From Mobula hypostoma (taxonomy: Eukaryota), in NCBI RefSeq assembly GCF_963921235.1, contig NC_086100.1, positions 32,612,001 through 32,676,000 of the forward strand: a stretch of DNA of 64,000 bases, given 5' to 3'. How positions within the stretch are numbered: the stretch's first letter is position 1; each line of letters opens with the position of its first letter. The notes beneath the pieces were generated by a model. That model was not told the DNA's origin. It saw nothing but the letters and a program-made list of their open reading frames with translations, and searched no databases. Below are positions 1-61,849 of the stretch, piece by piece. Position numbers and translations under genes: made by a program.

Positions 1-291
1 TGAGAGGGACATGCAGGAATCCATACCTTTGACTGCTTTAGGTAGGGGCATTTTGAGCATACTAATTGCACATGTCCTCAACACCTTTAAAGATTACTTT
101 GGGGGTGGTGGGCATAATTGGTAGAGGGTAGAAAGGAAAATGGTTCTGCTGGTTGTCATCTTCATATATACCAGCATCTGACTGACAAACAATTTAATCT
201 GGCAAAGTTCCCAAAAATGTTTTGCTGCCATAAAACAACACACTTCACAACACATACATCAGTTATAATAAAACTGATTCTTATTCTGAGA

Positions 292-618
292 CCTCCAAGA
301 GGACCACAACCTTGTCATATGGTTTGGAGGCTTGCGTGCCTCTGTGACCCAGGGAGCCATGTTGGCTGGAGTCAGGGCCTTGTGCCTTGGCTCTTGGTAG
401 GGTCCCCCATGCCAAACAGTGCAAAGGTTAGAGGCCAGACTAAGAGTGGTCCACTGGTCCTCCGGGTTCATGGGTTCAGCTCAGGGATACAACCCCGACT
501 GGTCAAGAAGAAAATTTATGGGAACAGCAATGAAGAATCCTTCTTTATCTGGACAGACAGAGACAGAGGACCTTCATTGCTGCCCTAAGTGCCAGTGCCA
601 TAACAGGCAGTAAGTAAG
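292..618 (+). mobile_element. Non-autonomous RTE-derived short retroelement (Expander/Rex3-like 5' leader fused to an RTE-type 3' end)
   Basis: 11-bp direct repeat TTATTCTGAGA at 281-291 and 619-629; ends in (TAAG)2; 5' part resembles the Expander/Rex3 5' UTR as recalled; no RT coding sequence. Confidence 0.65.
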
Positions 619-2443
619 TTATTCTGAGAATTCTTCTACTTTGTCATCAAAAACACACCATGGTTAAAGCACTCCATTTCACATATACTATAAGCATTTT
701 CTTTTCAACATGATGATTATATTATGTTTAAATCTCCTTTTACCCCACTTATGTATAAAAATGTCCGAGGAGTTTTCTTAAATTCTTCTGTAAAATTAAG
801 TTTTTAATCAATCCAAATGTTGGGAGAGTAAAAGCAATGGAAGCTTAAGTAAGCAAAATATTCATTATCAGAAGTAGATTAGCAGCTGTTAAGGTCATAG
901 GCCCTAAACTGGATTGTTGAAAAAAGACATGAATTTGCCCTTCTTTATCAGGGTATTTCATGGTTAAAGACCTGGTAGATTATGGAGAAAACACGTGACC
1001 ATGAATGATCAGGTATTTCATTCATTTTGCAGTCGATGGGATTAACCCTATCATGATTAACATTAAAAGACTCAGCTCTTCCAATACTGGATAAATCAGC
1101 GGGACAGTCAATTTCTCACTGAATGATGCAAATATAAAATAGTACTAAAATTGCCCTATCTGCAGCTGTCAAATTTCCTTAGTTTATTTATAGTTTGTTT
1201 GTTAGTTTCAGTAGCAATCTTTGTAGCATGGTTTCTCAGACATGAGATCCATTGATTAAAAACTCAGCTGAACCAATAAAAAATATAGCAGGTCAAAGAC
1301 TAGGGAGTTTGCAGACTGAGACCAGCCTGCCTGACATCTCTGAACCTCTTCACCATCTACATTTCGCAAATCTGGACTGTGTTAAAATCATCCCTTCTTG
1401 CTTGGATGAATGTAACTTGAACAAAACTCAGACATTTCCAAGGAAAAAGCAGTCCTTTTGACTGGTATCCCATCCAACACCAAAAACATTCACTGTCTCA
1501 ATCACAGGTGCACTAAAGCTGCTGTGCATACATATTCACAAAATGCACTGCAGTTAATCGCCAAAACTCTTCCAGAGCACATTCCAAACTTGTATTCTCT
1601 ACCATCAAGAACAGCATGGGCAGTGGAGATGTGCCTATCAGGATTCCTCCAAGTAACATACCACCCTGGCTTTCAACTATATCAGTGGTCCTTCATCATT
1701 CTGAACCTACATGCTGAACTCACTACACAACTCTGGGAGGACTCTCACCAGATGGACTGCGGTGATTTTTAAAGGTTGCAGAGCAATCACTTTCCAGGGA
1801 AAGTGGAATTTGGTATTAAATTCTGGCCTTGTCAATCACATTATAAAAAAGTGTTGTGTCTGTAAAGTGTCCCAAGAAAACTAGAAAGTGCTTCCAACAG
1901 TTAATTTTATACAGCTAAATGGATGAGTATGCCATTAGATGGACACATTTTCTTGATATTAAGAGGGCAACAATTAACACCTGAAGCTTAGATACAGCTA
2001 TAAGCACAAAGATGTGTATACATAAGGAAAGACTTTTCCCCTAGACACTGAACCAAACTATCCACAATCTTGGTGTTCTAATTGCCTGAGATTCCAGTCT
2101 CATATCCACTTCATTATTAAGACTACCATCTTCAACCTCTGATCTCTGTAGAATCACCCTGTTAACAGCCTTCTTGTCTAAAAGAAACCCATCAGAAATT
2201 ACACTGTGCTTCCTGTCACTTAATTCATTTTGGATCCACTCTCCCTTATAAGCCTTGGGCTTTCACTTCCATTGAACAGCATCTATTTGAGTCTTTCTCA
2301 AAAGCCTTGCTAAATTCTTCATCAACTTTCCACATTACCTTTTCCAAGAATCTAACAAATCAGGCAAACATAACCATCCTTTATCAAATCCATGCCAAAG
2401 CACCCTGCAGGTCCTGATTAATCTGTGACTAAATATTGCAAGG

Positions 2444-3900: not shown

Positions 3901-6848
3901 GACGCCCCTGCGCAATATCATGCTGATGAGTATTGGAGACAGGCATTGGGCACTAGGTATAAACAATGATTGGCAACAGGATGCAGCAAATTAAAGTTCC
4001 ACAAAAATTCATAACACTCTGCATGCCACATTTTTTTTTACATCAACAGAATACACCTGCAATCATCAGGGAGAGTCCAGATGACACCAGACTACCACAC
4101 TTGCTGTAGTCCAGGTCCACCAATGATGAATAGCAGAAACCAGTTATTTTAATAAATTAGAACAGAATGCTGGAAGAAGCAGGTCAAACAGCATCTGTAG
4201 AGACAAAAACTGAATATCTCCAGCATTTTCTGAATTTATTTCAGATTTACAACAGCTGCATTTTCTTTCCTTTCTTTTATTGTGATGTTGCTTAGTCTCC
4301 TGTTTCTAATCCCTCACCCCAGAAGTACAGGACTTTTCCTCTAATATGCACCTGGCTTGTCCCTCTGAGTAACAGTGGGTGCAACTGTCACCTTACTTGC
4401 AGCATCTGTCTCCTCCATAATCCTTACAGTATGCATTGGTGCTGCTACATGTGTGGGGTTAAGAGATGAAGCACGCATCCAAAGATTGCAATGTCAGAAA
4501 ATACACAAAATTGGGTGAGTTCTGTCAGGAATTTACCTGGTTCCCGTTGCATGCTTCTGGATAGAAACCATACTAATACTGCTTTGAACTGGATTTTTGC
4601 CAGTCAGTCTGTTGCTCTTTTTTGGCAGAGGACTTGATTAGTTATCAACACCAATTACATATGTTGCAGTAAAATAAAACTCAGCATAAATTTTGGGCAT
4701 ATGTTATGTTAATTAATTGATTGATTATTCTGTATGAATCTAGGTGGGAAGACAGTGGTGTTAATCCTAATATAATCCACTAGATGAACTAAAGTGGCTC
4801 AGAAAAATAAATTAAATCATCATTAACTCTTGCAAATTAAACAGTAATTATGCGAACGGGTTAAGGCTCATCCAAACATATCAAGGTCTCAGTCTTCTTA
4901 TATTGATTTTGCACACTTTTATAATCTATTTCTAGTTTTTATTTTTCTCGTACTTTGAAACATGGTTAATGTATAAATTGGTGTTTTCAATGTTTATTTC
5001 ATTGCAATTAGTTTCATTCTGATTTTTCATTATATGGATAATAAACATAATAACACAGATTCCACAACTGTACAAATTTCAGTTTATTCACACCGGTATT
5101 ATATACAACAGATTTTTGCTGCTGTATTTTGACACCTACTTTTGTAATTTTGACTCGCCTATTTTCAACCTGGTTTGAAAGAACATTAGTCTTATCCTTT
5201 AATACCTTACATAATTACTAAGTGTGACTCATGACTGATCAACCAACGATGGAAAGTGTCACTTTTTTGATTAAGAATGAAACTCAGGAAAGATTATAAA
5301 GAGAATATATGAAAGAAAAAATGAAAAATAGTTAACAATTAGTTTCAAGATATTCAGCTCTGAAGAATACATCTTCTAAATTCAAGTGATTTAGTTGGTT
5401 TAGAAAAACTGAATAGTAGTTTTGATTATTTTATGGAATATATGCACTAAGATAGTCAAGGATGGCCTTTCTAAATCTGCAACAGATTTAACTACAGAAA
5501 AAATAAGGCTTTTGTTTTTTGCAGAAACTGGCTGTGCAGCCAAGCAATTAAAATGAGATTGATAAGATGACATTGTGGACAGAATAAGCTATTGTGCAAA
5601 TGCTCCATGTATTATGTTTAATAATAAATCTTTTCAGAGAGGAAGTGAAAAGTGATGAAAACTCTGGAGCTTTCTTCAATTCTAATCATATTAGAGGTTT
5701 GGTTTTACAGTATCAAATGAAGGCTCATTAAATTTTTTGTGCTAAATAATGACAAAAACTCATAATGACAAAGCTTTAAATAGAGTGATAGCTGTCCTTT
5801 TGTAAATGCAGTACTAAGAATAATTATTGCTTGACTTTGTACCACACGTTGAAAGCACAAACATTCAGTCCAATCTACCAGCACTATGCAAGTCAAATTG
5901 TCCTAATATTTTGTTGTGAAGAATACTATTGAGGAGACAGGTGTACTTGAGGGTCAGAACCTGTAACAGAATTGAAAAATTACAATCATGTCATTTGTTT
6001 TATGCGATCTGAAAAGTAGAAAAGAAATATTACACAAGAGAGATCATGTACCGGAAGTCTCCTCTGACAAGCCACACATAGAATTACAAAGAAAGCCAGT
6101 GTATAACTAGCCAAGGAAGCAGTATCCTGATGTATTGGGATACAATGACAGAACAGAAAACATGAGGTAGAGGGATAGAGTGGCAGAAACAAAATGTTAA
6201 TAATTGGGTGTATTTTGATATAAATAACCTGAAGTTACTGATTCTCTGACTCACAGCAGACTCCTATAATTTAAATGACCTCCTCACCCAGCAGCTCTAT
6301 TGCATTCACAATTGGGGTTTGGAGATGTCAGTAGCTACTCTAACTCCTCTGCTGTCTGTCTGGACTCTAGTTATTGACCTTTTATGTTGTTGCAACAAGA
6401 CTACAATGAAAGCTGCAAGAACAATTGTATAATTTTTCTCAGCAGTTCTTACAAACTGTGGAAATTTTACCTCAATATTTCATTGTTCTTCAAATAAATT
6501 TACAATATTTTGACATGAACACTGTTTTTAGCATTTTGAAACCTGTATCAATTTCACATTTTCATCCTTCCCATTTTAGATTTCCTCGAGCTTTCCAGTT
6601 CCTTACCTTTTATACACTGTCTTATGCTTCTGTCTGACATTATACTGAAATAATTTTTCCATATTTCAGTTTGCATGTTCCTGTCAGAATCAATGCAAGG
6701 CTAACAGATTTAGGAAACCTTGGCTTTTGAGAGATATTGAGAAAAAAAGGAGGTTCTATCAATACCTCCAGTTGGACTCTGTCTTTTTGTGTGTTTTCCC
6801 CCCAACTGTCAGTCTGTGGTTTTGTATTGCTGTGTGCTCCTGTCCCTG

Positions 6849-9362
6849 CTGTCTGTCTGTATCTTGTTTTACGGCGGTTGGCATCCAGCTTAATGGTGCA
6901 TTACCGCCTCCCTCTGCTCCAGAATGTGCACTAGACATACATTCTAAATCCCTTCATCCAATCTCTCTCGCGCGCGCATATTATATATATATATACATAC
7001 AAACCTACACTTCACCCTCCCATCTTTGACCATCCTAGTATCCTATTCCTGTTTATTCATCATAATCTATAAAAAACCCCTGTACCCCTTAAAAACGCTA
7101 AAAATACCCGGACTTGTGCTCTCTCACCCATGCCCAGCAACCCTTTTAATGTGAATTCCTGCATCCCCAACTCCCTTAATTTATTTCTCATCATCTCTCT
7201 CTGTATCCCATACTTCCTGCAACTCAGAACTACATGTTCTACTGACTCCTCTTCCTGACATTCCTCACACAATCCTGTCTGGTGTTTCCCTATCATTTTC
7301 AACGTTTTGTTTAATGCACAATGCCCCAGCCTTAACCTAGTCCACACAATTTCCTCTCTTCTGTTTCCATTACATACCCTAGTAACTGCAATACTCTTTT
7401 GTATTTGATATAAATGCCTCCTGTTCCCCTCCTTGTCCCATCTTTCTTGCCACATTCGGTTGACTTTTTCCCAGATTACACACTTAACCTCTGCTTTACT
7501 GATACTAATGTGCATTTCCACATTTTCTTTCTTTAACGCCCTCTTTGCCAACTCATCCACCCTCTCATTCCCCTTCACCCCTACATGTGCTGGAACCCAT
7601 AGAAATTTTACCTGACCTCCCTGATTTGCAATTCTTGTAACTAACTGAAGGGCTTCATAAAGTACATCTTGCCGACTGTTTATGTGAAAAGACCTTAAAC
7701 TTGCTAGAACTGAGGACGAATCTGAACATATCAATGCTTTGGCTTGTCTGGCTTTCTGCACCCATTGCAACGCAACCAACACTGCCAGCATCTCCACTGT
7801 AAACACCCCTAATTTATTAGATTTTCTTCTGCTGATTCCAATTTCTTTTGCTGGTATTACCACCCCAAACCCTGTCACTCCTGTTTCAGGTTCCTTCGCA
7901 CCATCCGTATAAATGTGAGTATAATCACTATACTTTTCCATCACATGACAGTTAAATGCATTTACCAAATCTGTTTTATATCTTTCTTTCCTTTTTACCT
8001 CTAACAAATGCCAGACTATGTCAGGCCATACAAGCTTCCATGGAGCTACAATCAGATAAACTGCTGAAGGACTTATCCTCAGATCAAACACTCCACATTC
8101 TTTCGCGATATCATTCCCTACCCGACTAAAGGTATCCCTCTGAAACCTCCCATTTTCCCAGCACTCCTGCAACACTCCTTTAGCAGGGTGAGAATTATTG
8201 TGCCCCTGCAAGTTAGCCCAGTAGTTTGCCATCAGTTGCATCCTTCTTAGTTCCAAAGGCATTATTCCCATTTCTACCTGTAGGGCTGACACTGGAGACA
8301 TTTTAAAAGCCCCACTGCACACTCTCAAGGCCTGAGCCTGAATCACATCCAGTTTCCTTATAAGAGACCTAGCTGCTGATCCATATACTATATTTCCATA
8401 ATCCAATACAGATCTTACTAAAGCCACATACATTCTCTTCAAAGCTGAACAACTTGCTCCCCATTCCCTACCAGTCAAACATCTCATCACATTTATTACT
8501 TTTTTACATTTCTCCTCAACTTTCCTGATATGGTCTTCCCATGTTAATCGTGAATCAAATACAACTCCCAGAAATTTAAATGATGCAACCCTTTCTAATT
8601 CAACCCCATACATTCTTAACTTCTTCCCTACCTCAACCCTTTTCCTGGTAAAAAATACAGTTTGAGTTTTATCTACTGAAAATCTACATCCCCAATCATA
8701 ACCCCACTCCACCACTTCACCACTTGTAGTTTCCTGATTATATGGTCCATGTTCCTGCCTCTTTTCCACAGGCCCCATCATCCACAATCAGTGACCTACC
8801 TATATCCACTGGTACCTTTGTGAAGACATCATTGATCATAATGATGAAAAGTAACGGGCTAATCACACTACCCTGAGGTGTGCCATTTTCCACTATGTAC
8901 TGTTTTGATAATTCTGATCCAATCCGAACTTGAATTTTTCTACCAAACAAAAAATCTTTAATCCAATTAAAAACTCTCCCACCAACCTCCACCTTGTGCA
9001 GTTTAATTAATAATCCTTCCTTCCACATCATATCATAGGCTTTTTCAATGTCAAAGAACACTGCCACTACTGACTCTCTATTTGCCTGGGCCTTCCTTAT
9101 TTCAGTCTCTAACATAATCACTGAGTCCATGGAATTCCTTCCCTTTCTAAAACCACTCTGATAACTTGCCAGCATTCCCCTTTTCTCAAGCTCATATGAT
9201 AACCTTTCTGTTATCATCCTTTCCATTATCTTACATATACTTGATGTTAATGCAATTGGTCTGTAGCTAGTGGGTTTTGACAGATCCTTGCCAGGCTTCC
9301 TTATTGGAATTATTACTGCTTCTTTCCACGCACTTGGTAATCTTCCCTCCTCCAACACACTC
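6849..9362 (-). mobile_element. 5'-truncated I-group (Nimb-like) LINE with RT, RNase H and C-terminal CCHC; frameshifted
   Basis: ORF 8738-9358 has RT motifs YRPIALTS, FFDIEKAYD, GTPQGSVISP and a degenerate IVDD; ORF 7060-8787 has RNase H IYTDG...ICSDS...WVPAHVGVKGNERVD and CEEC...H...C; 3' UTR GGCGGTAATGCACC...GCCAACCGCC and a short (ACAG)n tail. Confidence 0.85.
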
Positions 9363-10052
9363 TGTTATAAAAATGCAGCAACTTCAGGAGCACTTCTTCT
9401 CCTAGATTTTTTAGCATCACAGAGCATATCAGATCTTTCCCTGTGGAGGGGTTGGTCTCGATCTCTTTATTGCTCTCACCTGTCCCTGCTCCTGCTCTAC
9501 TCCTTCTCTCATCTGCTACTCGTTATTACCTGTGTCTCATTGTGCTCCTGCTCTACTCTGGCCCCTGTATTACTGAGTCCTCCATCTCTCATCTGCTTCT
9601 CATTATTACCTGTAGTGGTGCACCTGTGTCTCATAGAGCTCCTGTCCCCACTCCTACTCTGCTCTGGCCCCTGTATTACTGAGTACTCTGTCTCTCATTT
9701 GCTTCTCATTATTACCTGTGTTGCTGCCACCTGTGTCTCATTGTGCTCCACCTATCATCTGCCTCTCTGTTTATTGCTCAGTGTATTTCAGTCCTGTGTT
9801 TTCACCTGTTGTTGCTGGATTATGTCAGTGAATTTTCCTGAGCCTTTCCAGCATTTAGATCTGTACTCTGTTTGTCTGAATATTGACTCTGCCTGTTTTC
9901 TGATTCTGGTTTTGGGATTTCTCTGGATATTTTGATCTTTGTCTGAACTTTGACACTGACTTTGTTTGCACCTCAGGATTTGTTACTCAATTAATATCAC
10001 TGTGTGCACCCTACTGGGTCTGTGATTGGATCCCTACTCCAGTGTCCTGATA
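9363..10052. repeat. Repeat with about three imperfect internal tandem units (80-105 bp); possibly a solo LTR
   Basis: Recurring TCTCATCTGCTTCTCATTATTACCTGT and CTCTGGCCCCTGTATTACTGAGT at about 9505-9750; starts with TGT; no TSD found. Confidence 0.4.
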
Positions 10053-12140
10053 GGTGTATAGCAGGTATAGGCAGCAAGGAACAGGGAGGTACTCGAGGAG
10101 TCTAAGGAATGTAATAGAACACTTAAGAGGGAAATCAGGAGGGCTAAAAGAAGAAGAGATTGCTCTAGCAGACCAGGTAAAGGAGAATCCCAAGGGATAT
10201 AGTAAGATAACAGACACATTTAGAGTAAAAGGATAGCAAGAAACAAAATTGGTCCTCTGGAAGATCAGCATAGTCATCCATGCATGGAGGAGAAAGAGAT
10301 TGGACAGAACTTAATTGCTCAGCAGACAAAAATAAGTCTGTAGAACTGAAGCAAAAGAGCAAGTGAGTTCATGAACCATATATGGGTTACAGCAGAAGAA
10401 CCTTTACTTTTTTTAAGGCATTGTAGTCTGGATAAAGAAGTTACAGATAGAGTAAATGCAAGCAGGCTTTTTCCACTGAGGTTGGGTGAGACTTGTACTA
10501 GAGGTCATAGGTTAAGGGTGAAAGGTGAAATGTTTAAGGGGCACATGAGGAACTTCTTTGCTTAGTGTGGGGAATGAGCTGCTAGCAGTACCAGTGAATG
10601 TGGGCTTGATTTCAATATTTAAAAGGTTAGATATGTACATGGATGAAAGGCATATAGAAGGCTATGGTGCAGGTTGATGGGACTAGGTAGAATATTAGTT
10701 CGGCATAGACTAAATGGGCCAGAGTGCCTGTTTCTGTGCTGTAGTGCCGTATGACTATTTACCGTAGAACATAGGACATTGTCAGGACACAGGGCAGTGG
10801 ATAAAGTGTTGAAATCTTTTACTTTGATTTAAACATCAATGTTCATCTGCAAGTATTTATCCTGACTTTATTTTTTAATGGCTGGTCCAGGAAGCATTGC
10901 AACAAAAATTGAACGATGAGGAAATGCTGTTATTCAAAAATGTGAAGTTCTAATAAATTCAGAATTGTATAATGCATAACAAATCTGTTGGAATTCATTG
11001 AGGAAATAACAGGCAAGACAGACAAAAGAGGGAGTGGATTCTATTTACAGTACTTGGATTTTCAGAAGTCCTTTGACAAGGTGCTTTATATAAGAATCTT
11101 AAAGAAGGAAAGAGCCCATGCTACTATAGAAAAGATACTAGCATAGCTAGAAGACTGGCTTATTGGTAGGAGACAAGAGGAGGAATAAAGGCATCTTTTT
11201 CTAGTTGGCTACCAGTGACCAAAGGTGTTCATGAAGGGTTGGTGTTGGGACTATCTCTTTTCACATTATATGTCAATGAACTTGATAAAATTTCTGGCTT
11301 TATGGCCAAGTTTACAGATGTCACAAAGTTGGGTGGAAGGGCAGGTCATGTTAAGAAAGCAGGGAGTCTGCAGAAGGACTTGGACAGATTAGGAGAATGA
11401 ACAAATAAATGGCAGATGGAATTTAGTGTAGAGACATTTATGTACTGTGGTAGAAAGAATAAAGACAAAGACTATTTTCAAAATATGGTGCAAATTCAAA
11501 AATCAGAGGTGTAAAGAGACTTGGGAATTCATGTAGCATTCCTTGAAGTTTAATGTGCATGTTGAGTTGGTGGTGAGGAAGGCCAATGCAACGGTAGCAA
11601 TCATTTCAAGAGGAATAGAATATAAAACCAAGGATATAATGCTGAAGCTTTATAAGGCATCAGTCAGATTGCACTTGGAGTATTGTGAGCAGTTTTGGGT
11701 CCCTTATCTCAGAACAGATTTGCTGGCATTGGAAAGGGTCCAGAGGTGGTTTACAAGAATGATCCTGGTAATGAAAGGGATAACCTATCAAATATTGATA
11801 GGCCTAGATAGAGTGGACATAGAGAGGATGTTTCCAGTAGTGAGTGTCCAGGGCAAGAAGACACAGCCTCAGAATAGAAGGATGTCCCTTTAGGAGACAT
11901 AAGGAGAAATATGGGCCAATGGATGGTGAATCTGTGGAATTCATTGACGTGGAGGCAAAGTCACTGGATATAGTTAAAGTGGAGGCTGATAGATTCTTGA
12001 TTAGTAAGGGCATCAATGGTTATGGTGAACAGGCAGGAGAACGGGTGTGAGCAGAGAAAATAAATTACCCATGATGGACCAATGGAGCAGACCTGATGGG
12101 CTGAATGGCCTAATTCTGTTCCTGTGCTGATTAGTCTTAT
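10053..12140 (+). mobile_element. Cluster of degenerate CR1 LINE ORF2/3' UTR fragments
   Basis: YLDFQKSFDKV, LYKASVRLHLEYCEQFWVPYL, LERVQRWFTRMI, TRGHRLRVKG motifs; CR1-type 3' ends near 10755 and 12140. Confidence 0.85.
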
Positions 12141-13974
12141 GTAAGGTTTATGTGGTTATTTGCACTTGCAATACATTTATTGCTGCTTTTTAAATAATGC
12201 TGAATCATTACAAAATTGTTTGCTTGAAATATTTTTGTTTGAATGTGGGGTATCTTCCAATTTAGTAATTGATCTGCCAATGAGTCAGCCAGCCATTCCA
12301 ATGTTAAACAATGACCAGTGACCCATAATTGCTTATCTTTTTGCTGGTTTAAATTCTGGATTGAATGCCAATCTAATACACATAATTCATTATGAGGAAC
12401 TACAAAGAACCTTTAATATGTAATTTTTGGTATCATGTTAAACAAGACAGTGAAAGCCTTCTGTAGACTTCTCATAAATGAGTAGATTAGGTTACCTGCA
12501 TCCAGGAACAACAACTTTATTTATCTAGAACCTCTAACATTGTAACATTTCCTTGCACAGGAGCATAACCAAATGAAATTTAACATCAATTCACATCTGC
12601 GGATGGTAGGATGGATGATCAAAGGTTATGTGGAAAAGGCAAGTTTTAAACAGACTTTTAGCGGGGGGGAGATCCATAGAAAGGCAGAGGTTTATGGTGA
12701 GAATTACAAAAGTTCAGCAGCTTGGGAAGCTTAGGATCAGAATACCAGTGACAGTTATATTTGAATTGGTTTTTAATTTCAAATATTCAAAGCACATTTA
12801 TTATCAAAGAATGTATAAATTATACACCTTGTGACTTATCTGCTTAATGGCAGCCAAAAAGCAAGAAACCCAAATAACCCAATTCAAAAAAAGACCAAAA
12901 GCCACTGAGCAGAGAAAGAGAGAGAGAGAGGAAAAAAAACACATCATGCAAACAATAGAAGCAAGCCAACAGCGTTCTGAACCAGAATAAGTCCCCAGAT
13001 CCGTGCCCAGAGCAGCTGGAACAGGCCCAAGCCTCGGTCCGAATTCACCACACCAGCAGGACAAAAACAGACTGCAGCCGGATCAGTTCACAGCCTTGGT
13101 GCCGCAGAGAAAGAAATGAACATTTGCTTGAGAGCGGGCAAAATCAGCCCAACCCTCGCCTCCGTTCCCAACACGCTGGCTTTTTAAATTGTCCAAGCAC
13201 CAGGTAGTGTTTAGGATCCGGGTCCTAGCACAGCGACACACTTGGGCCACACTGCCCAAAGCCATTCTCGATCTCACCAAATCGTCTCAGCACTTCGAGT
13301 GATTCAACCTCTCACCTGGGTTGGGTGAATGGGCATTGAAACTCTTCTGCATTGACTCCTCTCCAAAATGCTCACTCCATCTCCAGCAGCAATACAGCCA
13401 ACTCCATCTGCAACCACGGCTCGAACACGTTGTGCCTTGCAATACTCCAGCACGGCTCATCCCTGAACCATCCTTGCCTCCGCGTGCCTCCTTATTGTCT
13501 GCGGCAATAGTTCACCATAATTTGCTTCAGAAAAGAGGTCATAAGTATTGTTTTTAGTCGAATCTCTTGCCTTACAATCTACCAGTAAGCTGTGGCAAAT
13601 CCTTGAGTTGAATCACCTTGTAATCACTAAAACAACAATGTTACTCAATATTACCCCAATTTAAAATACAACCAAAAAGTTACAATTATTTTATCTTATG
13701 TTTGCCTATTTCATGTTTTATTTATTAGAGGAATCAACTAAGAATTGACCAGAATTACTAATTATAAAAACTGTTTATCTCTATGAATAGGAAACTGGTT
13801 AAAATAAAATGAAGTGTAGGTATTTCTTCACTGGAGTGAAAATTCCAGGACCGATGTTAGGACTTGTGCTCTTTTTACCAGTCTTATGGTTTTAAAAGCT
13901 TAAAGCATATTTATTATTTCTGGGAGAAGCACCAAAGTTCCGCATGACATGTTATACTAGAATAACTAGAGTGT

Positions 13975-14262
13975 GGGCATGTGTCCAAGTGGTTAAGGCA
14001 TTGGACTAGCGACCTGAAGCAACGTGTTGTGTCCTTGAGCGAGGCACTTAATCACACATTGCTCTGTGACGACACTCGTGCCAAACTGTATGGGTCCTAA
14101 TGCCCTACCCTTGGACAACATCGGTGTCGTGGAGAGGGGAGACTTACAGCATAGGCAACGGCTGGTCTTCCATACAACCTTGCCCAGGCCTGCGCCCTGG
14201 AGAGTGAAAACTTTCCAGGCGCAGATCCATGGTCTCGCGAGACTAACAGATGCCTTTATTTA
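13975..14262 (+). mobile_element. tRNA-headed CORE-type SINE with RTE-like tail
   Basis: CAAGTGGTTAAGGC A-box region, CORE-like TGTGTCCTTGAGCGAGGCACTTAATC, tail ATCCATGGTCTCGCGAGACTAAC; B-box appears deleted. Confidence 0.55.
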
Positions 14263-15602
14263 CTAGAATGAAGAACAAAAGTTACAGCAAGAATACTCTT
14301 GAAAAAAAATTGGTAAATATTGTTATTATTGTAAGATGTATCAAGGTACAGCAAAAAAATGTCTAGACTACAGTCAAATCCAGAATTCAGAATCCAGAAT
14401 CAGAATTTATCACTGGCATGTGTTGTGAAAGTTGATATTGATCAGTGAATTACAACAGTGTACTGAGGTAGAACAAGGCAAAACAATGAGTGTAAATTGT
14501 TACTGTTACAGAGAAAGTGCAGTGCAGGTAGACAATAAGGCATGAAGTCATAACAAGAAACACTGATGTCAAGAATGCATTTTAAAGTACTCAGGCACCC
14601 TTTAGTAGTCTTATAACAGCAGGATAAAACAGTCCTTGATGAAAAAGATATTAAGTTTTAGCAAATATAGCATTGACATATCCAGTCACTGCTTTATAAC
14701 AAGAAGTACATTTAACTATTTGCATAATAGCTTTATTTCTATCTTTGATATCTCTTTTTTTCCCTTTCAAGTTTCTTTTGGAGACCCTGACCTGGAGTTA
14801 CACACTGACTTTGGTTCTTTGTGGAAATGGGCACGCTCTCAGAGCTTCACAACTGGCCACTTTTTGATATGCCAAGGACGTGACCTGGAGGATTAGCGCA
14901 CCTTCAGGGTGCCGGATTTCCGTGGCTCTGGAGACGGGCTAATTCAAGGCTGGTACTGCTGCCTGCTGTGTCGTGGGAGTACACAGAAGATCGAAAGCAG
15001 CGTGCTGGCTGTGTGCCCTGGGACCTGAGCTCTTCGGGCAGAGAGCTCAGAAAAAGCGGTGCAGCAGACTTTTAACAAAACAACTCGCTGATTTATGGTG
15101 TTATGTCTCCCCTCTCGCTGTGAAACAGGGACACCTCGTTTTGCCTTATTAGGAAGAGAGAGAGCCTGTGGTATGTCGAATGCTGGGTGAACGAATAGTC
15201 TGTGGGGTACTGCAAATCTGTGTCTTTATTTAAGCTTTGCTGTATGCTTGAGTGCTTGGTCGGGGTGCTGATGCTTTTTTTGCTGGTTGGGGTGTGGGTT
15301 GTTGCTTTGCTGCTGCTTGTGTGAGGGAGGGGGGAGTTGGGGGGGCTTTGGGGTTCTAACATTTAACTGTCATTCATTCTTTGGGGCACTCCTCTGTTTT
15401 TGTGGATGTTTACGATGAAAAAGAATTTCAGGATGCATATTGTATACATTCCTCTGACATTAAATGTACCTATTGAAACCTATTGAAAGTAGCAAATATG
15501 ATCATGAACCTGTTTTTACCATTTTATTAGCATAGGAAATATCTATGAACATGATTCAGGAGAAATCATCACTTACCTATGCATTCTAGAGATGGTGTAC
15601 AG

Positions 15603-18117
15603 TAGGGGTCGCCAACCCGTCGATCGTGATTGACCGGTCGATCTTTGAGACTTTCCCAGTCAATCCCAAAAAAAATGAAAAATAAATACACAAATACTGT
15701 TGTAATGTGAGCATTATAAAAATAAGTAATACTAATTAGGATAATGGTAATATAGCAATATTTTCACTATTGAAAACTATTTGTAAAGAGAGATTGTTTC
15801 TGGGTTGTGGGGTCTTAGTTCCGTTCTTTCTGTCCAGTGTGCATGTGTGTAGCTCCCCCACCATGCACCGCATTTTCAGCGTAGCTTGTGCTGCATCAAA
15901 GTGACCAATTAGATTGGATAAGAGTACTGACTGTCACAACCATCAATACACGGCACTTGCTTGTGATATTCTGCAAGGTAGCTAGCTAGCACGGCGGAGG
16001 CTCCACGAAAGAAGGCGAAAACTTACAACTTCCATCCAGAATGGGAAGAGGAATTTCTATTTACCTCGGTGAAAGACAAGTGTGTATGTATGTTGTGCCA
16101 CCAACCACAAGCACCCTCTAAAAGAGGGAATCTGGAGCGGAACCACAACACCAACCACCAGAAATTTAAAGACACCTACACCCCCAAAGAGTGCAATTTG
16201 TGCCAGGAAAATTGAGGAGCTGAAATCGGGGTTGAAGGCCCAGCAATCCTTTTTCACAAAACATGCTGCTCAAAATAAGGCTGCTATTGAAGCATTTCGT
16301 GTAAGTCACCTTTTGGCTAAGCAGAAGAAGCTTTTTACAGATGGCGATTTATTCAAGGAAGCAATGGCCATTACCGCAGAGACTGTTTTTAATGACTTTA
16401 AAAACATAAGCGACATCACAACCGCTAATATACTGTCAGAGGACGTGGATCGACAAGTGTTAAAGGACTTGTCACTCTGTGAATATTTTTCACTGCAGTT
16501 CGATGAATCCCTGGATGTAATGCAAACAGCTCAGCTTGTTATATTTGTCAGAATGGCTTTCCAGGATTTTACAACAAAGGAGAACTTCCTCACTCTTTTG
16601 CAATTAAAGGAAAGAACGAGAGGTGAGGATATTTACAATGAGTTTAAAAAATATATCCGTGAAAATGACATCCCCATTCATCAACTGATGGCAATTACTA
16701 CTGATGGGGCTCCAGCAATGCACGGTGTGTGTGTTGGTTTTATAGCACTGTGCCGTAATGACCCTGATTTTCCCAGCTTCCTAGATTATCACTGTGTGAT
16801 TCATCAGCAGGCCTTGGCTGGGAAGGTCGTGGACTTTTCTCAAGTAATGACACTGGTGGTCAAACTGATAAACTTGATTCGAGCAAAAGCCCTTCAGCAC
16901 CGCTTATTCAAGGCGTTATTGGATGAGCTCGATGACGCTTATGGAGACATAATTCTTCATGCTGATGTTCGGTGGTTGAGTCGCGGCAAAGTGCTGCAAC
17001 GATTCGTTGACTTGCTGCCTGAGGTAAAGACTTTCCTGTCAACAAGAAACGAGGAGCACGAGGAGCTGTCAGATGATGCGTGGCTACTGGATTTAGCGTT
17101 TCTGACAGACATAACGGCTAAATTAAATACACTTAATAACGAGCTCATGGGAAAAGACCACCACCTAACCCACACGATAAGCGCAGTAAATGCGTTTAAG
17201 GCCATGCTCGGTGTCTGGATTTCAAATTTAAAGAAAGGGAGGCTGACACACTTTCCCAACTTGGAAAAAATGTTACCGGCCATCATGGAAAAAAATACTT
17301 TTCGCCCTGAGCAGTACTGTGCTCACTTAGACAAACTAGCAATAGAATTCGATGGGCATTTTGGGGAGTTAAACGTCATGAAAGATATTGCTGCATTTAT
17401 TTCAAACCCATTTCTGCCGATTGATATAGAACAGATAGCAGCCAAACTCCAGCAAGTATTTGGTGCGCCAAGTGATTCTGAAATGGAAATAATTGATTTG
17501 CAAATGACATCAAGCTTAAAGCAAGATCAGGGGATGGTGACTTTTGGAGGCTTGTCAGCAGGGAGAAGTTTCCTTATCTCACCGCATGTGCACTAAAAGT
17601 CAGTGCTTACTTCGGGTCAACTTATCTGTGTGGAATTGCATTTTCACAGATGAAAATTATTAAATTTAAGTACAGGAGCTCTCTTACTGACAGACACCTC
17701 ACAGACTGGCTGTCTGTAGTTATGAGCCAAATTTCATGGAACTAGCAGAAAGTATTCAGCCCCAGTCATCCCACTGAGTGCAATGGCAAATTTTTATTCA
17801 TTTATTTTTCGTGTTGAAATAAAACTAAATAATGAAACTTAGAATTAAAGGTGTGAAGTATTGTAATACTTGTATTCTTAAAGAAAGACAGTTATGGCCT
17901 GTTTGATATGCCAGTTACAGTGTTTTCTTGTTTGAACTAATTTGAAAGTTTGACAAAAGTATTTTGTGTAATTCAAATACATTTAGCCCAAATAAAAGGC
18001 CTCAAATTGGAAGTACAATCTGAGCTGTGTTTTCTCTAAATGATTTAGTAGGTAGATCTCACCTTTTACTAAGGTCGAGGTGGGGGATCTTGGGCTTAAA
18101 AAGGTTGGTGACCACTA
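15603..18117 (+). mobile_element. Full-length hAT DNA transposon (Buster/Charlie group), 2.5 kb
   Basis: TIRs TAGGGGTCGCCAACC (15603-15617) and GGTTGGTGACCACTA (18103-18117), 13/15 match; 8-bp TSD GTGTACAG (15595-15602) / GTGTACAA (18118-18125) with central TA. Confidence 0.9.
15991..17777 (+). pseudogene. hAT transposase (GTF2IRD2/EPM2AIP1-like family), frameshifted
   Basis: BED-like N-terminus (YNFHPEWEEEF...CVCMLC) in a different frame from ORF 16082-17596 (SLQFDES, ITTDGAPAM, HCVIHQQAL, VRWLSRG); C-terminal FGSTYLC...FSQMK follows another shift near 17500. Confidence 0.85.
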
Positions 18118-31640: not shown

Positions 31641-32096
31641 GGTTCAGGTACTGCAGTGTACTTTGCTTCCCAGAAACATGGCTCACCAATCAGATGCAGC
31701 ACTGCAGCCCATGGGCTTCACCATCCACCAAAAAGACAGGGCATCTGAGTCCTAAAGGTTGAAGAGGTGGTGTATGCTTTATGATTAACTCATCGTGGTG
31801 CACTGCCATGGTTGACCTGTCTCAATCCTGCTCACAGTGCCTGGAACATCTAGTGGTCAAGTGTCGTCCATTTTATCTGCTGAGGGAGTTTTTCACCATC
31901 ATCCTGGTAACAGTGTACATTCCGCCTCAGGCCAATGTCAACCAGGTACTGGAGGAGCTGAGCACCATGATCAGCAGTCATAAAACAGCACACCCTAATG
32001 CCTTCCCTAACACTGTGGGGGATTTTAACCAGGCCAGCTTGACCAACATATCACTTGTGGAACCGAACAGGCCAATACACTAGACTACTGATATAC

Positions 32097-32383
32097 TGTA
32101 GCGATGTGCTACACACAGTGCTAGAATAACCACACGGAGTTGGTGAGTTGGAGTTGTGATGAAAGAGATTTATTCAAACTTCGCGGCCCGCTTTAAAGCC
32201 TTCCCGTTCCCGCCCTCCCTGGGTGGGACTACTGTGGGGAATGCATATTCCCAGACCCTTTCTGCGCACGGGATTTTCCCCCTGCTGGTGAAGATGGCCT
32301 GGCGCCCTTTTTGCTGCCGGCCCTCTGCCTGCGCGCGCTGTTTCCTGAGCCGGTTCGTGAGTGCCAGAAAGTGGGTCGCCACA
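32097..32383 (-). repeat. 3' LTR
   Basis: Direct repeat of 36173-36459 with 13 substitutions by my count; AATAAA on the minus strand. Confidence 0.95.
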
Positions 32384-35300
32384 TAACCCCCCCCCCCCCC
32401 CAGAACCGGCGATACCTTCCCCAATGTCCACAGTCTGGATCGGCCTCTGTTTGGGAGGTCTGCCCCTGCGCCGCAGTGCCTGAGCCTGGACCGGTTGCGC
32501 CAAGTCCACATGGGCCGGTTTGAGTCGGTCCACTGTGAAAACCTCCTCTCTCCCCCCAATGTCCAGCACGAACGTGGACCCGTTGTTGCTGATCACCTTA
32601 AACGGCCCCTCGTAGGGCCGCTGTAGCGGTGCCCGGTGTCCACCCCGTCGTACAAAAAGAAACTTACAGTTCTGCAGGTCTTTGGGTACGCAGGTCGGGC
32701 TCTGTCCGTGCTGTGAAGTGGGGATGGGGGCCAGGTTACCGAGCCTCTCCCGTAGTCTGTCCAGGACTGCTGTGGGTTCTTCCTCTTGCCCCCTTGGGGC
32801 TGGTATGAACTCTCCTGGGACGACCAGGGGCGCGCTGTACACCAACTTGGCCGACGAGGTGTGCAGATCCTCCTTGGGCGCTGTGCGGATTCCGAGCAGG
32901 ACCCAGGGAAGTTCGTCCACCCAGTTAGGCCCCTCCAGGCGGGCCATGAGAGCCGATTTCAGGTGACGGTGGAAGCGCTCCACTAGTCCGTTCGACTGTG
33001 GGTGGTAGGCAGTTGTGTGGTGTAGCTGTGTTCCTAGAAGTCTGGCCATAGCCGACCACAGGCTGGAGGTGAACTGGGCGCCCCTGTCAGAGGTAATGTG
33101 GGCCGGTACCCCAAAGCGTGCTACCCAGGTTGCGATCAGTGCTCGGGCGCAGGATTCGGAGGTGGTGTCGCTGAGCGGGACTGCCTCTGGCCATCTGGTG
33201 AACCGGTCTATCATAGTTAGGAGGTACCGCGCTCCTCGTGACACTGGCAGGGGCCCCACGATACCCACATGGATGTGGTCGAACCTCCGGCAGGTGGGTT
33301 CGAACCGCTGCGGTGGAGCCTTGGTGTGCCGCTGCACCTTGGCCGTTTGGCCATTCACTGACCTGTTTACGAAGTCCATGCCACACGAACCTGTTGGAGA
33401 CCAGCCGAACAGTTGTCCTGATGGAGGGGTGCGCTAAGTTGTGAATGGATTCGAACACCCGCCGGCGCCAGGCTGCTGGGACGACGGGGCGGGGTTGGCC
33501 AGTAGCTGCGTCACATAGTAGGGTCCTCTCACCTGGGCCTACGGGGAGGTCTTGGAGCTGCAAACCGGAGACTGCAGTCCTGTAACTGGGGATCTCAGCG
33601 TCTGCCTGCTGTGCCTCTGCCAGCGCTGCATAGTCGACCCCCTGGGACAGGACCTGTATGGTAGGTCTGGAAAGTGCGTCTGCCACGACATTGTTCTTTC
33701 CAGAGACATGCCGGATGTCCGTCGTGTACTCGGAGATGTAGGACAGATGTCGCTGCTGGCGGGACGACCAGGGGTCGGACACCTTAGTGAACGCAAAGGT
33801 AAGCGGTTTGTGGTCTGTGAACGCGGTGAAGGGCCTACCTTCTAAGAAGTACCTGAAATGCAGGATTGCCAGGTATAGTGCCAATAGCTCCCGGTCGAAA
33901 GCACTGTATTTGAGTTCGGGTGGTCGTAGGTGTTTGCTGAAGAACGCCAGGGGTTGCCAGCGACCCTCGATGAGTTGTTCCAGCACTCCACCGACTGCTG
34001 TGTTGGATGCGTCCACCGTGAGGGCAGTAGGAACGTCCGTTCTGGGGTGCACTAGCATCGCGGCGTTTGCCAAGGTTCTTTGGTTTTAACGAAAGCGGTT
34101 GCGGCCTCTTCGTTCCAGGTAATGTCCTTGCCCTTACCCGACATTAGAGTGAACAAGGGGCGCATGGTTCAGGCTGCTGAGGGGAGGAAACGGTGGTAGA
34201 AATTCACCATACCCACGAATTCCTGCAAGCCTTTGATTGTGTTGGGTCGGGGGAAGTGGCGGACCGCGTCTACCTTGGCGGGCAGCGGGGTTGCCCCGTC
34301 TTTAGTAATCCTGTGGCCCAGGAAGTCGATGGTGTCGAGTCCGAACTGGCATTTGGCTGGATTGATTGTAAGGCCGAATTCACTCAGGCGGGAGTAGAGA
34401 TGGCAGAGGTGGGACAGATGCTCCTGCCGACTACTGCTGGCTATGAGGATGTCGTCCAAATAGATGAATGCAAAGTCCAGGTCGCGACCCACCGCGTCCA
34501 TTAGCCACTGGAAAGTCTGTGCGGCATTCTTTAGACCAAACGGCATTCGGAGGAATTTGAAAAGTCCGAACGGGGTGATAAGTGCTGTTTTGGGGATGTC
34601 GTCCGGATGTACAGGGATTTGATGGTATCCCCGGACGAGGTCTACCTTGGAAAAGATCCTTGCGCCGTGTAGGTTTGCTGTGAAGTCTTGAATGTGCGGC
34701 ACAGGGTAGCGGTCTGGCGTTGTAGCCTCGTTCAGTCTGCGGTAGTCACCGCATGGTCTCCAGTCCCCGGTTGCCTTGGGCACCATGTGAAGGGGGGAGG
34801 CCCATGGGCTGTCGGACCGTCGTATGATCCCTAATTCCTCCATCTTCTTGAACTCCTCCTTCGCCAGTCGGAGCTTGTCCGGGGGAAGCCTTCGAGCACG
34901 GGCGTGGAGGGGTGGTCCCTGGGTCGGGATGTGGTGCTGTACTCCGTGTCTGGGCATGGCTGCCGTGAACTGCGGTGTCAGTACTGATGGGAAATCTGCC
35001 AGGACCCTGGTGAATTCATCGTCGGACAGCGTGATGGAGTCCAGGTGTGGGGCTGGCAACTGTGCTTCACCCAGGGAGAACGTTTGAAAAGTCTTGGCGT
35101 GGACTAATCGCTTCCCTTGCAAGTCGACCAGCAGGCTGTGGGCTCGTAGAAAATCTGCCCCCAGCAGTGGTTGGGCCACGGCGGCCAGTGTGAAGTCCCA
35201 CGTGAACCGGCTGGAGCTGAACTGTAGCCGCACCGTGCGGGTGCCGTAGGTTCGTATTGTGCTGCCATTAGCGGCCCTCAGGGTGGGTCCCGGTTCTCTG

Positions 35301-35455
35301 TTGCGGGTGTCGTAACTGGTTGGAGGTAAGACGCTGATCTCCGCTCCGGTGTCGACCAAAAAGCGGCGTCCCGACTGCTTGTCCCAGACATACAGGAGGC
35401 TGTCCTGATGGCCAGCCGCCGTAGCCATCAGCAGCGGCTGGCCCTGGCGTTTCCC
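32384..35455 (-). pseudogene. Gypsy pol (protease, RT, RNase H, integrase), disrupted
   Basis: FLVDTGA, YLDD, TVDAS, TDHKPL, ITSDRGAQF, GLVERFHR, GPF; TGA at 34169-34171, frameshift near 34075, deletion near 33345 removing the integrase CxxC. Confidence 0.9.
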
Positions 35456-38620: not shown

Positions 38621-38742
38621 CAGGTTAGAAATGTGGAGGCAGCTTGAGACCCTGCAACAGGACTGAGGGGAAATGGTGAGACAGAGGCTGGCAGTCATAA
38701 GGTGGAATCAAACAAGGAGGCAAATGCTACCTAAATGGAACT

Positions 38743-38778
38743 AGTCCTGACGAAGGGTCTCGGCCTGAAACGTCGACT
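38743..38778 (+). ncRNA. Minimal type I hammerhead ribozyme motif (Penelope-type)
   Basis: AGTC-CTGACGA-AGG(GTCTCGG)CCT-GAA-ACGT-C-GACT: stem I AGTC/GACT, CUGANGA and GAAA core, stem II, palindromic ACGU in place of helix III, GUC cleavage triplet. Confidence 0.7.
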
Positions 38779-38840
38779 GCACCTCTTCCTACAGATGCTG
38801 CTTGGCCTGCTGCGTTCACCAGCAACTTTGATGTGTGTTG
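38745..38840 (+). mobile_element. 96-bp Penelope-derived insert with 15-bp TSD
   Basis: CCTAAATGGAACTAG at 38730-38744 and 38841-38855. Confidence 0.8.
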
Positions 38841-61845: not shown

Positions 61846-61849
61846 TACC

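What the first reader, a model, noticed from the sequence alone, without database searches (positions are those of the whole stretch)
292..618. TSD-flanked 327-bp retro-insert whose 5' half can form a compact double-pseudoknot RNA (ribozyme candidate)
Seen in sequence: an 11-bp TSD and seven complementary segments within 152 nt: 301-307/446-452 (GGACCAC/GTGGTCC, closes the domain), 308-313/424-429, 320-327/435-442 (2 GU), 328-331/338-341, 346-350/400-404, 362-366/411-415, and a 10-bp hairpin 369-378/384-393. Helix 308-313/424-429 crosses 320-327/435-442, and 346-350/400-404 crosses 362-366/411-415, giving two pseudoknots. Established: RTE-clade LINEs often carry 5' self-cleaving HDV-like ribozymes. 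Inference: this fold is larger than HDV-like and I could not fit it to that topology. The element kept only this leader plus the 3' end and still retrotransposed, so the structure may be a functional, possibly uncharacterised, processing or translation-initiation RNA.
Basis: partly seen in the sequence, partly recalled or inferred. Interest (0 to 1): 0.75.

Follow-up and report, generated by a model that had tools for sequence, protein, structure and literature searches.

The report
Delta-type ribozyme heading a ray retroposon
This 327-base insert is a worn copy of a very abundant, protein-less jumping element of rays. Its front end fits the known hepatitis-delta-type self-cutting RNA fold, so it is a new member of a known kind and not a new ribozyme.

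Summary
The insert is real. It spans 292-618 inside a perfect 11-bp target duplication and ends in a GTAA-type tail. Contigs from three coded ray organisms show it is one copy of a very abundant short repeat, and most copies start at base 292.

All seven complementary segments exist, but segments of that length are as common in shuffled sequence. Only 301-307/446-452 is supported by comparison. Two of the helices that make the proposed pseudoknots are broken in the family's majority letters and in the one outside relative.

- P1 292-298/324-330
- P2 301-307/446-452
- P3 308-311/321-324, with L3 312-320
- one-pair P1.1, G314-C331
- a roughly 100-nt P4 domain closed by 338-344/429-435
- J4/2 carrying C436/C440

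A strict descriptor hits only base 292 in 128 kb, and base 1 of 0 out of 20,000 shuffles of the element. P2, P3, P1.1 and the P4 closure each keep pairing through a two-sided change in the relative. P1 has no comparative support.

This copy carries A at the conserved L3 G (317) and is probably dead. Cleavage is untested and no Rfam family matches. The scan has already reported HDV-like-headed retroposons elsewhere in this genome.

The parts
281..291 (+). Left target-site duplication, TTATTCTGAGA
   Evidence: Identical to 619-629.
292..618 (+). Non-coding, non-autonomous retroposon copy, 327 bp
   Evidence: About 13,000-16,000 contigs per DNA run lie on it. Word depth rises from about 8-17 in the flanks to 65,000-350,000 inside. 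The loose-end mode is at 292 (808, 737 and 574 contigs) and at 619. Its ORFs match no Pfam family.
292..298 (+). P1 5' strand, CCTCCAA; predicted cleavage is just 5' of C292
   Evidence: Seven Watson-Crick pairs with 324-330. A strict descriptor hits only here in 128 kb and in 0 of 20,000 shuffles of the element.
299..300 (+). J1/2, GA
   Evidence: A short linker, as in most HDV-like ribozymes (PMC4908430).
301..307 (+). P2 5' strand, GGACCAC
   Evidence: Pairs with 446-452. In L001, C304-G449 becomes U-A and C305-G448 becomes U.G.
308..311 (+). P3 5' strand, AACC
   Evidence: Pairs with 321-324. A308-U324 becomes C-G in L001.
312..320 (+). L3 catalytic loop. It reads TTGTCATAT here; the family majority has G at 320 and G at 317 in about half of the contigs
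   Evidence: 317 A>G in 46-61% of depth and 320 T>G in 74-85%. L001 reads TTATCGT. U at loop position 1 and G at position 6 match HDV/CPEB3 U20.G25 (PMC4836649).
321..324 (+). P3 3' strand, GGTT; T324 is shared with P1
324..330 (+). P1 3' strand, TTGGAGG, directly after P3
   Evidence: Perfect complement of 292-298.
331..331 (+). P1.1 partner: C331 pairs with G314 of L3
   Evidence: G-C in the ray, A-U in L001. A one-pair P1.1 is known in CPEB3 and L1Tc (PMC4836649, PMC3185411).
338..435 (+). Large P4 domain closed by helix 338-344/429-435
   Evidence: The closing helix is paired in both sequences, and U341-A432 becomes C-G in L001. With majority letters the inside folds as hairpin 345-374 plus a rod 375-436.
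436..445 (+). J4/2, CAGACTAAGA, with two candidate catalytic cytosines (C436, C440)
   Evidence: CNRA motifs at C436-A439 and C440-A443. L001 keeps CAGAGA. The ORF translations P0001 and P0002 read E-T-K-S here, which implies G436 with C440, A442 and A443 kept.
446..452 (+). P2 3' strand, GTGGTCC
454..498 (+). Conserved downstream module: hairpin 454-457/462-465, a G run at 470-474, and hairpin 482-486/494-498
   Evidence: Conserved between the ray and L001. Its role is unknown. It can also pair with 299-306 and with 292-296.
525..582 (+). 3' stem-loop, the likely recognition site for the partner LINE's reverse transcriptase
   Evidence: Inverted repeat. Folding 515-618 gives z -4.84, with 0 of 200 shuffles as good.
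608..618 (+). Short GTAA-type tail (CAGTAAGTAAG)
   Evidence: Sequence. Other copies run on as AAGTAA... beyond 618 (loose ends at 619).
619..629 (+). Right target-site duplication

Best explanation
Window 292-618 is a decayed copy of a very abundant, non-coding, non-autonomous non-LTR retroposon of rays. It consists of a 5' leader joined to a 3' stem-loop and a GTAA-type tail.

In the family, the first 161 nt fold as an HDV-like self-cleaving ribozyme:
- P1 292-298/324-330
- 2-nt J1/2
- P2 301-307/446-452
- P3 308-311/321-324
- L3 312-320
- one-pair P1.1, G314-C331
- a roughly 100-nt multi-helix P4 domain closed by 338-344/429-435
- J4/2 436-445, carrying the catalytic cytosine (C440 or C436)

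Inferred mechanism: the element has no shown promoter and is transcribed as part of longer host transcripts. The ribozyme cuts just 5' of C292 and frees an RNA that begins at the element's first base. A partner LINE's reverse transcriptase recognises the 3' stem-loop and tail and copies the RNA into a nicked AT-rich target. That gives copies with a fixed 5' end and an 11-bp duplication.

What is shown: the insert, its abundance, the fixed 5' end, the pairings, and their conservation in one relative. What is inferred: cleavage, co-transcription and the partner LINE.

This copy has A instead of the conserved L3 G at 317, plus about 13 other private changes, so it is most likely inactive.
For: - Insert and family. 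TSD and tail are confirmed. Contigs of three coded organisms pile up on 292-618 only. The modal 5' boundary is at 292 (808/737/574 contigs, against 130-253 at 291, 293 and 294), with no consensus upstream.
- Descriptor test. The strict descriptor was: P1 7 WC bp, J1/2 1-8 nt, P2 7 WC bp, P3 3 bp, L3 6-10 nt, P1' directly after P3', CNRA before P2'. Its only hit on both strands of the 64-kb window starts at 292, while whole-window shuffles give 0-2 hits. In 20,000 dinucleotide shuffles of the element it starts at base 1 zero times (intermediate descriptor 1, loose descriptor 11).
- Comparison with the one relative (metagenome locus L001, alignment A2). P2, P3, P1.1 and the P4 closure are 100% paired in both sequences, each with one two-sided change. 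Overall 92% of cells are paired, against 34-54% when the partners are slid.
- L3. It has U at position 1 and G at position 6 in about half of the family contigs and in L001, matching U20.G25 of HDV and CPEB3 (PMC4836649). A317 beside C316 fits CpG decay.
- J4/2. It holds C-N-R-A, and translations of two further relatives keep C440, A442 and A443.
- This copy matches the family majority at every P1, P2, P3 and J4/2 position. Its private changes fall in L3, P4 and downstream.
- Strand asymmetry of folding.
- The kind is known from RTE, R2, L1Tc and their short derivatives (PMC6765202, PMC3774820, PMC4035085).
Against: - No cleavage data.
- No Rfam HDV-like model matches, even at E up to 10.
- The cleavage-site pair is C292-G330, not the usual G.U wobble.
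- P1.1 is a single pair with reversed letters.
- L3 is 9 nt here, and with majority G320 it can zip up into a 7-bp hairpin 308-314/318-324 that competes with P1.
- P1 is not paired in L001 (4 of 6 cells unpaired), so P1 has no comparative support.
- The 5' end has other perfect partners: 295-301/391-397 and 299-306/455-462. CCUCC can also pair with G470-G474, and that pairing is kept in L001.
- The comparison rests on two sequences, and the structure was derived from one of them.
- Earlier scan notes describe a fold with a 28-nt L3 for what may be the same 5' module.
Confidence: 0.68

Rival explanations
1. The leader is a structured but non-catalytic 5' module, for example an internal promoter, an RT- or protein-binding platform, or an IRES-like element. 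It folds as a nested multibranch domain in which the 5' end CCUCC pairs with G470-G474. The fixed 5' end at 292 would then come from transcription initiation, not from self-cleavage.
For: - The RNAalifold consensus of ray plus L001 pairs 294-296 with 472-474 and leaves 325-337 unpaired.
- That pairing stays possible in L001, while P1 of the HDV model does not.
- The nested MFE (-70 kcal/mol) is about as stable as the pseudoknotted model.
- No Rfam hit.
- L1Tc shows that one 77-nt leader can be both a promoter and a ribozyme (PMC3383444).
Against: - It does not explain why the 7 nt right after P3 are a perfect Watson-Crick complement of the element's first 7 nt (about 6e-5 by chance).
- It does not explain the L3 U...G spacing, the P1.1 co-change, or the CNRA motif before P2'.
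- The 292-296/470-474 pairing is only 3 bp in this copy and 5 bp in the majority, and every change in L001 is one-sided.
Confidence: 0.2
2. It is an HDV-like ribozyme in a different register, as earlier scan notes describe for abundant roughly 565-bp elements of this genome. In that fold P1 pairs the first bases with 468-474, P3 is 434-436/465-467, L3 is 28 nt (437-464) with an inserted hairpin, and there is almost no P4.
For: - Earlier notes s1-142368, s1-141860 and s1-141938.
- In this window, P3 434-436/465-467 leaves exactly 28 nt between its strands, and that stretch ends in UCCUCCA.
- The motif 455-474 is strongly conserved in L001.
Against: - I found no P2 for this register.
- Its P3 5' strand overlaps the P4 closing helix 338-344/429-435, and its L3 contains 446-452. 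Both of those helices keep pairing through two-sided changes in L001.
- Its P1 has an A297/C469 mismatch, and only 3 of 7 pairs are left in this copy.
- I cannot tell whether those notes concern the same family.
Confidence: 0.07
3. One reading: a new, larger double-pseudoknot ribozyme or processing RNA built from 308-313/424-429 crossing 320-327/435-442, and from 346-350/400-404 crossing 362-366/411-415.
For: - The segments exist in this copy.
- 346-350/400-404 and 362-366/411-415 stay pairable in L001, the latter through T363-A414 becoming C-G.
Against: - The first pseudoknot is broken in the family's majority letters (A309/G428, G320/A442) and in L001.
- The 10-bp hairpin is deleted in L001.
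- Helices of this length are at chance frequency.
- The second pair of helices competes with the local hairpin 394-415 and with 356-359/363-366, which also keep pairing in L001.
Confidence: 0.03

Closest known systems
HDV-like self-cleaving ribozymes at the 5' end of non-LTR retrotransposons (RTE, Baggins, R2, L1Tc) and of their short non-autonomous derivatives (R2 SIDEs, NARTc, SIDER)
   Same: - Nested double-pseudoknot order P1-P2-P3-L3-P3'-P1'-P4-J4/2-P2'.
- 7-bp P1 and 7-bp P2 joined by a short J1/2.
[quoted passage not shown]
- It sits on a non-coding derivative that keeps only the 5' leader and the 3' end (PMC6765202, PMC3774820, PMC4035085, PMC4908430).
   Different: - The host is a cartilaginous fish.
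- The P4 domain is about 100 nt and multi-helix, with a 7-nt J1/4.
- The cleavage-site pair is C-G, not G.U.
- L3 is 9 nt.
- The fold is invisible to the Rfam models.
- Activity is untested, and the parent LINE was not identified here.
Mammalian CPEB3 ribozyme
   Same: - L3 begins with UU and carries G at position 6, then U (U20, U21, G25, U26).
- P1.1 is one G-C pair next to a U-U (PMC4836649). Here G314-C331 sits next to U313/U332.
   Different: - CPEB3 is a compact, roughly 68-nt, single-copy intronic ribozyme with a short P4 and a G.U at the cleavage site.
- This one is a repeat-borne ribozyme with a large P4 domain, and the letters of its P1.1 pair are swapped.
L1Tc ribozyme (L1TcRz / Pr77) of trypanosomatids
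   Same: - It occupies the first bases of the retroelement and of its non-autonomous relatives.
- P1.1 is a single pair.
- The GC orientation in P1 differs from HDV and R2.
- Downstream sequence can refold it (PMC3185411, PMC4035085).
   Different: - L1TcRz is 77 nt and doubles as a tested internal promoter.
- No promoter function or attenuator has been tested here.

Membership tests
HDV-like self-cleaving ribozyme | Five pairings in the nested double-pseudoknot order P1, P2, P3, P3', P1', (P1.1), P4, P2' | tested here: met
   All are present in that order at 292-452. The strict descriptor is unique in 128 kb and hits base 1 in 0 of 20,000 shuffles of the element.
HDV-like self-cleaving ribozyme | P1 of 6-7 bp and P2 of about 7 bp joined by a short J1/2 (PMC4908430) | tested here: met
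   P1 is 7 WC bp, J1/2 is 2 nt, and P2 is 7 WC bp.
HDV-like self-cleaving ribozyme | The helices are kept in relatives through compensatory change | tested here: inconclusive
   P2, P3, P1.1 and the P4 closure each show one two-sided change against L001 and are 100% paired. P1 is unpaired in L001. Only two sequences were compared.
HDV-like self-cleaving ribozyme | L3 has a U at its start and a conserved G that form the reverse wobble U20.G25 (PMC3774820, PMC4836649) | tested here: inconclusive
   The family has G317 in 46-61% of contig depth, and L001 reads UUAUCGU. This copy has A317, so the family meets the feature but this copy does not.
HDV-like self-cleaving ribozyme | P1.1: 1-2 pairs between L3 and the bases right after P1' | tested here: met
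   G314-C331 in the ray, A-U in L001. It is a single pair, as in CPEB3 and L1Tc.
HDV-like self-cleaving ribozyme | A catalytic C in J4/2 followed by purines (C-N-R-A) just before P2' | tested here: met
   C436-A-G-A and C440-U-A-A lie within 436-445. C440, A442 and A443 are implied in two further relatives. Which C is catalytic is unknown.
HDV-like self-cleaving ribozyme | G.U wobble at the cleavage-site pair of P1 | tested here: not met
   The pair is C292-G330. Trypanosomatid HDV-like ribozymes also differ from HDV and R2 in the orientation of the GC pairs in P1 (PMC4035085), so this feature is common but not universal.
HDV-like self-cleaving ribozyme | Match to a curated covariance model (Rfam HDV, CPEB3 or drz families) | tested here: not met
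   No match at E up to 10 in 1-1200, and none at gathering score in the whole window. These models cannot score pseudoknots, and a roughly 100-nt P4 insert is penalised.
HDV-like self-cleaving ribozyme | Site-specific self-cleavage 5' of P1 | not testable with these tools
   Only indirect evidence: family copies begin at 292.
Non-autonomous non-LTR retroposon (internally deleted LINE, SINE-like) | Target-site duplication, 3' tail, no coding capacity, many copies with shared ends | tested here: met
   11-bp TSD. GTAA-type tail and shared ends at 292 and 619. No Pfam hit and no tRNA head. A 3' stem-loop with z -4.84.
RTE-clade origin | 5' leader and 3' end shared with an RTE-type LINE (APE plus RT ORF) | not tested
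   No parent LINE or other copy lies in the window. RTE parentage is stated only in earlier unchecked scan notes.

The most novel reading that the evidence does not exclude
The ribozyme may be coupled to a conserved downstream module (454-498, including the near-invariant CUGGUCCUCCAGGUU and a G run) that can pair with the P2 5' strand (299-306/455-462) and with the 5'-terminal CCUCC (292-296/470-474).

That would make the leader a two-state RNA: an HDV-like cutter during transcription, then a refolded nested domain that hides the new 5' end or presents it for reverse transcription or translation. The family, shared by rays and at least one unrelated host, would be a large vertebrate clade of HDV-like ribozymes that current models miss.
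Probability: 0.15. Interest if true: 0.55.

Novelty: new member of a known kind. Interest (0 to 1): 0.3.

Why it matters
It gives a concrete, testable HDV-like fold for one of the most abundant repeats of ray genomes. HDV-like ribozymes are hardly documented in vertebrates outside CPEB3 and a few R2 elements. It also shows how a large P4 domain, a C-G cleavage-site pair and a one-pair P1.1 hide such ribozymes from Rfam models.

For annotation, it explains the sharply fixed 5' end of the family. It is not a new ribozyme class, and the scan has already reported the same kind elsewhere in this genome.

Tried and rejected
**RNA and coding checks**
- Rfam at E up to 10 on 1-1200 and at gathering score on the whole window: nothing relevant.
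- tRNA head: none.
- Pfam on both long ORFs: nothing.
- Other copies or a parent LINE in the window: none.

**Hunt for homologous copies**
- Protein-word search with the element's 99-aa ORF: 0 hits.
- One metagenome scan: a single locus, L001.
- Two genome-contig scans and four viral-contig scans: 0 hits.
- Protein search with L001's ORF: two short ORF translations, P0001 and P0002.
- Full-text search for four sequence motifs: only unrelated primers.
- Ruminski 2011 (PMC3308841) is not held.

**Models rejected or left open**
- The loose, GU-tolerant HDV descriptor is non-specific: 84 start sites against 70-105 in shuffles.
- An HDV register with a 28-nt L3: no P2, and it conflicts with covarying helices.
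- P1 with a long J1/2 in L001: a chance-level match.
- A one-column shift that would give L001 4 of 6 P1 pairs is not significant, so I did not use it.

**Caveats on method**
- The majority-letter versions of 292-452 and 515-618 were made inside scripts only, to fold them. The element is a non-coding retroposon, not a virus or provirus.
- The runs laid were contigs only, so they cannot show RNA 5' ends or expression.

Full report
**1. The observation**

The window is eukaryotic DNA of about 40% GC with no N stretches. TTATTCTGAGA stands at 281-291 and again at 619-629. The 327 bases between them end in GTAAGTAAG.

The + strand of 298-455 folds well above chance: -72.7 kcal/mol, z -3.47, none of 200 shuffles as good, and the MFE equals the centroid. 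The - strand does not (z -1.25). The RNA sense is therefore +.

Counting complementary segments carries no signal, however. In 301-452 there are 89 helices of 5 bp or more (GU allowed), against 76 +/- 6.5 in dinucleotide shuffles. There are 12 against 12.8 of 7 bp or more, and 1 against 0.8 of 10 bp or more.

**2. What the insert is**

There is no second copy and no LINE fragment related to it in the window. It has no tRNA-like head, and its ORFs match no Pfam family.

Public runs of three coded organisms hold the locus or the element. I laid Logan contigs of three DNA runs and one presumed RNA run on 142-768 at 80% likeness. The result:
- About 13,000-16,000 contigs per DNA run lie on the element.
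- Summed word depth jumps from about 8-17 in the flanks to 65,000-350,000 inside.
- Contigs leave the reference at 292 (808, 737 and 574 contigs, against 130-253 at 291, 293 and 294) with no consensus upstream.
- Contigs leave at 619, running on as AAGTAA.
- Several contigs are collinear across 292-551.

The 327-bp form is therefore a member of a very abundant short family with a fixed 5' end, not a one-off deleted LINE. A contig of organism C bridges the left flank and the element (142-317, 4 differences), so the insertion is shared with that organism.

The 3' part folds into a long stem-loop at 525-582 (z -4.84), followed by the GTAA-type tail. This is the usual handle for a partner LINE's reverse transcriptase (inference).

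Earlier notes of this scan say the genome is a ray and that it carries abundant RTE-derived retroposons headed by HDV-like ribozymes. Those notes are unchecked and served only as a lead.

**3. This copy against its family**

The same call lists the places where most contigs read another letter: 320 T>G, 343 T>A, 344 G>A, 353 G>A, 358 C>T, 379 C>T, 382 G>A, 386 C>T, 405 C>A, 420 T>G, 421 G>T, 428 T>G, 464 G>A and 471 T>G. Position 317 A>G appears in 46-61% of depth.

With these letters two reader helices lose pairs (A309 faces G428, G320 faces A442).

**4. The HDV-like fit**

Reading from the first base, the 161 nt at 292-452 contain:
- CCTCCAA (292-298), a perfect Watson-Crick complement of TTGGAGG (324-330).
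- GA (299-300) as the linker J1/2.
- GGACCAC (301-307), pairing with GTGGTCC (446-452).
- AACC (308-311), pairing with GGTT (321-324) around a 9-nt loop.
- CAGACTAAGA (436-445), just before 446, which holds two C-N-R-A motifs.

This is the order and nearly the spacing of the HDV fold: P1, J1/2, P2, P3, L3, P3', P1', P4, J4/2, P2'. The cleavage site falls exactly at the element's first base.

Tests of the fit:
- A loose, GU-tolerant descriptor is non-specific (84 start sites in the window, 70-105 in shuffles).
- The strict descriptor has a single hit on both strands of the 64-kb window, at 292. Whole-window shuffles give 0, 0, 0, 2 and 1 hits.
- In 20,000 dinucleotide shuffles of the element itself, a hit starting at base 1 occurs 0 times (strict), 1 time (intermediate) and 11 times (loose).
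- By rough energy bookkeeping the pseudoknotted fold is about as stable as the nested MFE of -70 kcal/mol.

**5. Comparative evidence**

Only one related DNA could be obtained: metagenome contig L001. It aligns over the whole leader at 76% mean column identity. I counted the pseudoknotted model on that two-sequence alignment.

| Helix | Paired in both? | Change seen in L001 |
|---|---|---|
| P2 | 7 of 7 | C304-G449 to U-A; C305-G448 to U.G |
| P3 | 4 of 4 | A308-U324 to C-G |
| P1.1 | yes | G314-C331 to A-U |
| P4 closure 338-344/429-435 | 7 of 7 | U341-A432 to C-G |

Overall 92% of cells are paired, against 34-54% when the partners are slid, and there are 5 two-sided changes against 0-2. P1 is not paired in L001. 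That copy may be 5'-truncated or decayed, so P1 has no comparative support.

L3 reads UUAUCGU in L001 and UUGUCGU(AG) in the ray majority. That places U at position 1 and G at position 6, the positions of the U20.G25 reverse wobble of HDV and CPEB3 (PMC4836649). In R2, a G-to-A change at this G abolished cleavage (PMC3774820). This copy has A317 next to C316, as expected from CpG decay.

The one-pair P1.1 next to a U/U has a precedent in CPEB3 and L1Tc (PMC4836649, PMC3185411).

Two short ORF translations of further relatives (P0001, P0002) read E-T-K-S across J4/2. This implies that C440, A442 and A443 are kept and that 436 is G. L001 has lost four bases there and keeps C436-A-G-A. Which cytosine is catalytic is open.

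**6. What speaks against it**

- No Rfam model matches.
- The cleavage-site pair is C-G, not G.U. Trypanosomatid HDV-like ribozymes also differ from HDV and R2 in the orientation of the GC pairs in P1, and the authors judged the classic descriptor too strict (PMC4035085).
- With majority G320, the stretch 308-324 can close into a 7-bp hairpin.
- The 5' end has other partners: 295-301/391-397, 299-306/455-462 (kept through wobbles in L001) and 292-296/470-474.
- The stretch 455-474 is almost invariant between ray and L001, yet it has no role in the ribozyme model. It may belong to an alternative fold.
- Earlier scan notes describe an HDV fold with a 28-nt L3 for abundant roughly 565-bp elements. 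In this window the only such register is P3 434-436/465-467. It lacks a P2 and collides with two helices that covary. I cannot tell whether those notes concern the same family.

**7. Mechanism, known relatives and novelty**

[quoted passage not shown] They may also help translation (PMC6765202, PMC3774820, PMC4035085, PMC7761336). Large peripheral domains are known in this family (PMC4908430, PMC3774820).

The present case works like these. It meets the structural criteria except the G.U pair and a database match, and it lacks any activity test. I file it as a new member of a known kind.

The unusual points are a roughly 100-nt multi-helix P4, a C-G cleavage-site pair and a one-pair P1.1. The scan has already reported the same kind on other DNA of this genome.

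**8. Limits**

- The laid runs were contigs, which cannot show RNA ends.
- The RTE parentage was not tested here.
- The comparative evidence rests on two sequences.

Noticed in passing
window 292-297 and 459-464; 454-460 and 498-504: Short direct repeats inside the element. CCTCCA occurs at the 5' end and again at 459-464, so the second copy could also pair with the P1 3' strand. ACTGGTC occurs at 454-460 and at 498-504.
   Followed up: partly
window 454-498: The stretch just 3' of the ribozyme (CTGGTCCTCC.GGTT plus a G run and a second hairpin) is nearly invariant between the ray and the metagenome relative. It has no role in the HDV-like model.
   Followed up: partly
L001 505-745 (- strand): A contig of an ENA metagenome assembly (ERZ1740055) carries a relative of the ray element's leader. 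It has a 14-nt deletion in the P4 domain and a 4-nt deletion in J4/2. This is presumably eukaryotic host DNA in the metagenome, and the organism is unknown.
   Followed up: partly
window 38730-38855: Another first-stage note on this window (s1-143087) reports a 96-bp mobile unit that is little more than a minimal hammerhead ribozyme. Rfam at gathering score found nothing in the window.
   Followed up: no
window 32001-36000: A 4-kb block with G+C 0.59, against about 0.40 elsewhere. It may be a CpG island or a GC-rich repeat.
   Followed up: no
window 6001-12000, 46001-50000, 60001-62000: Blocks with strong GC skew: -0.29 to -0.35, then +0.32 at 10-12 kb. They may be strand-biased repeats in opposite orientations. 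A 106-bp tandem duplication lies at 9545-9749.
   Followed up: no
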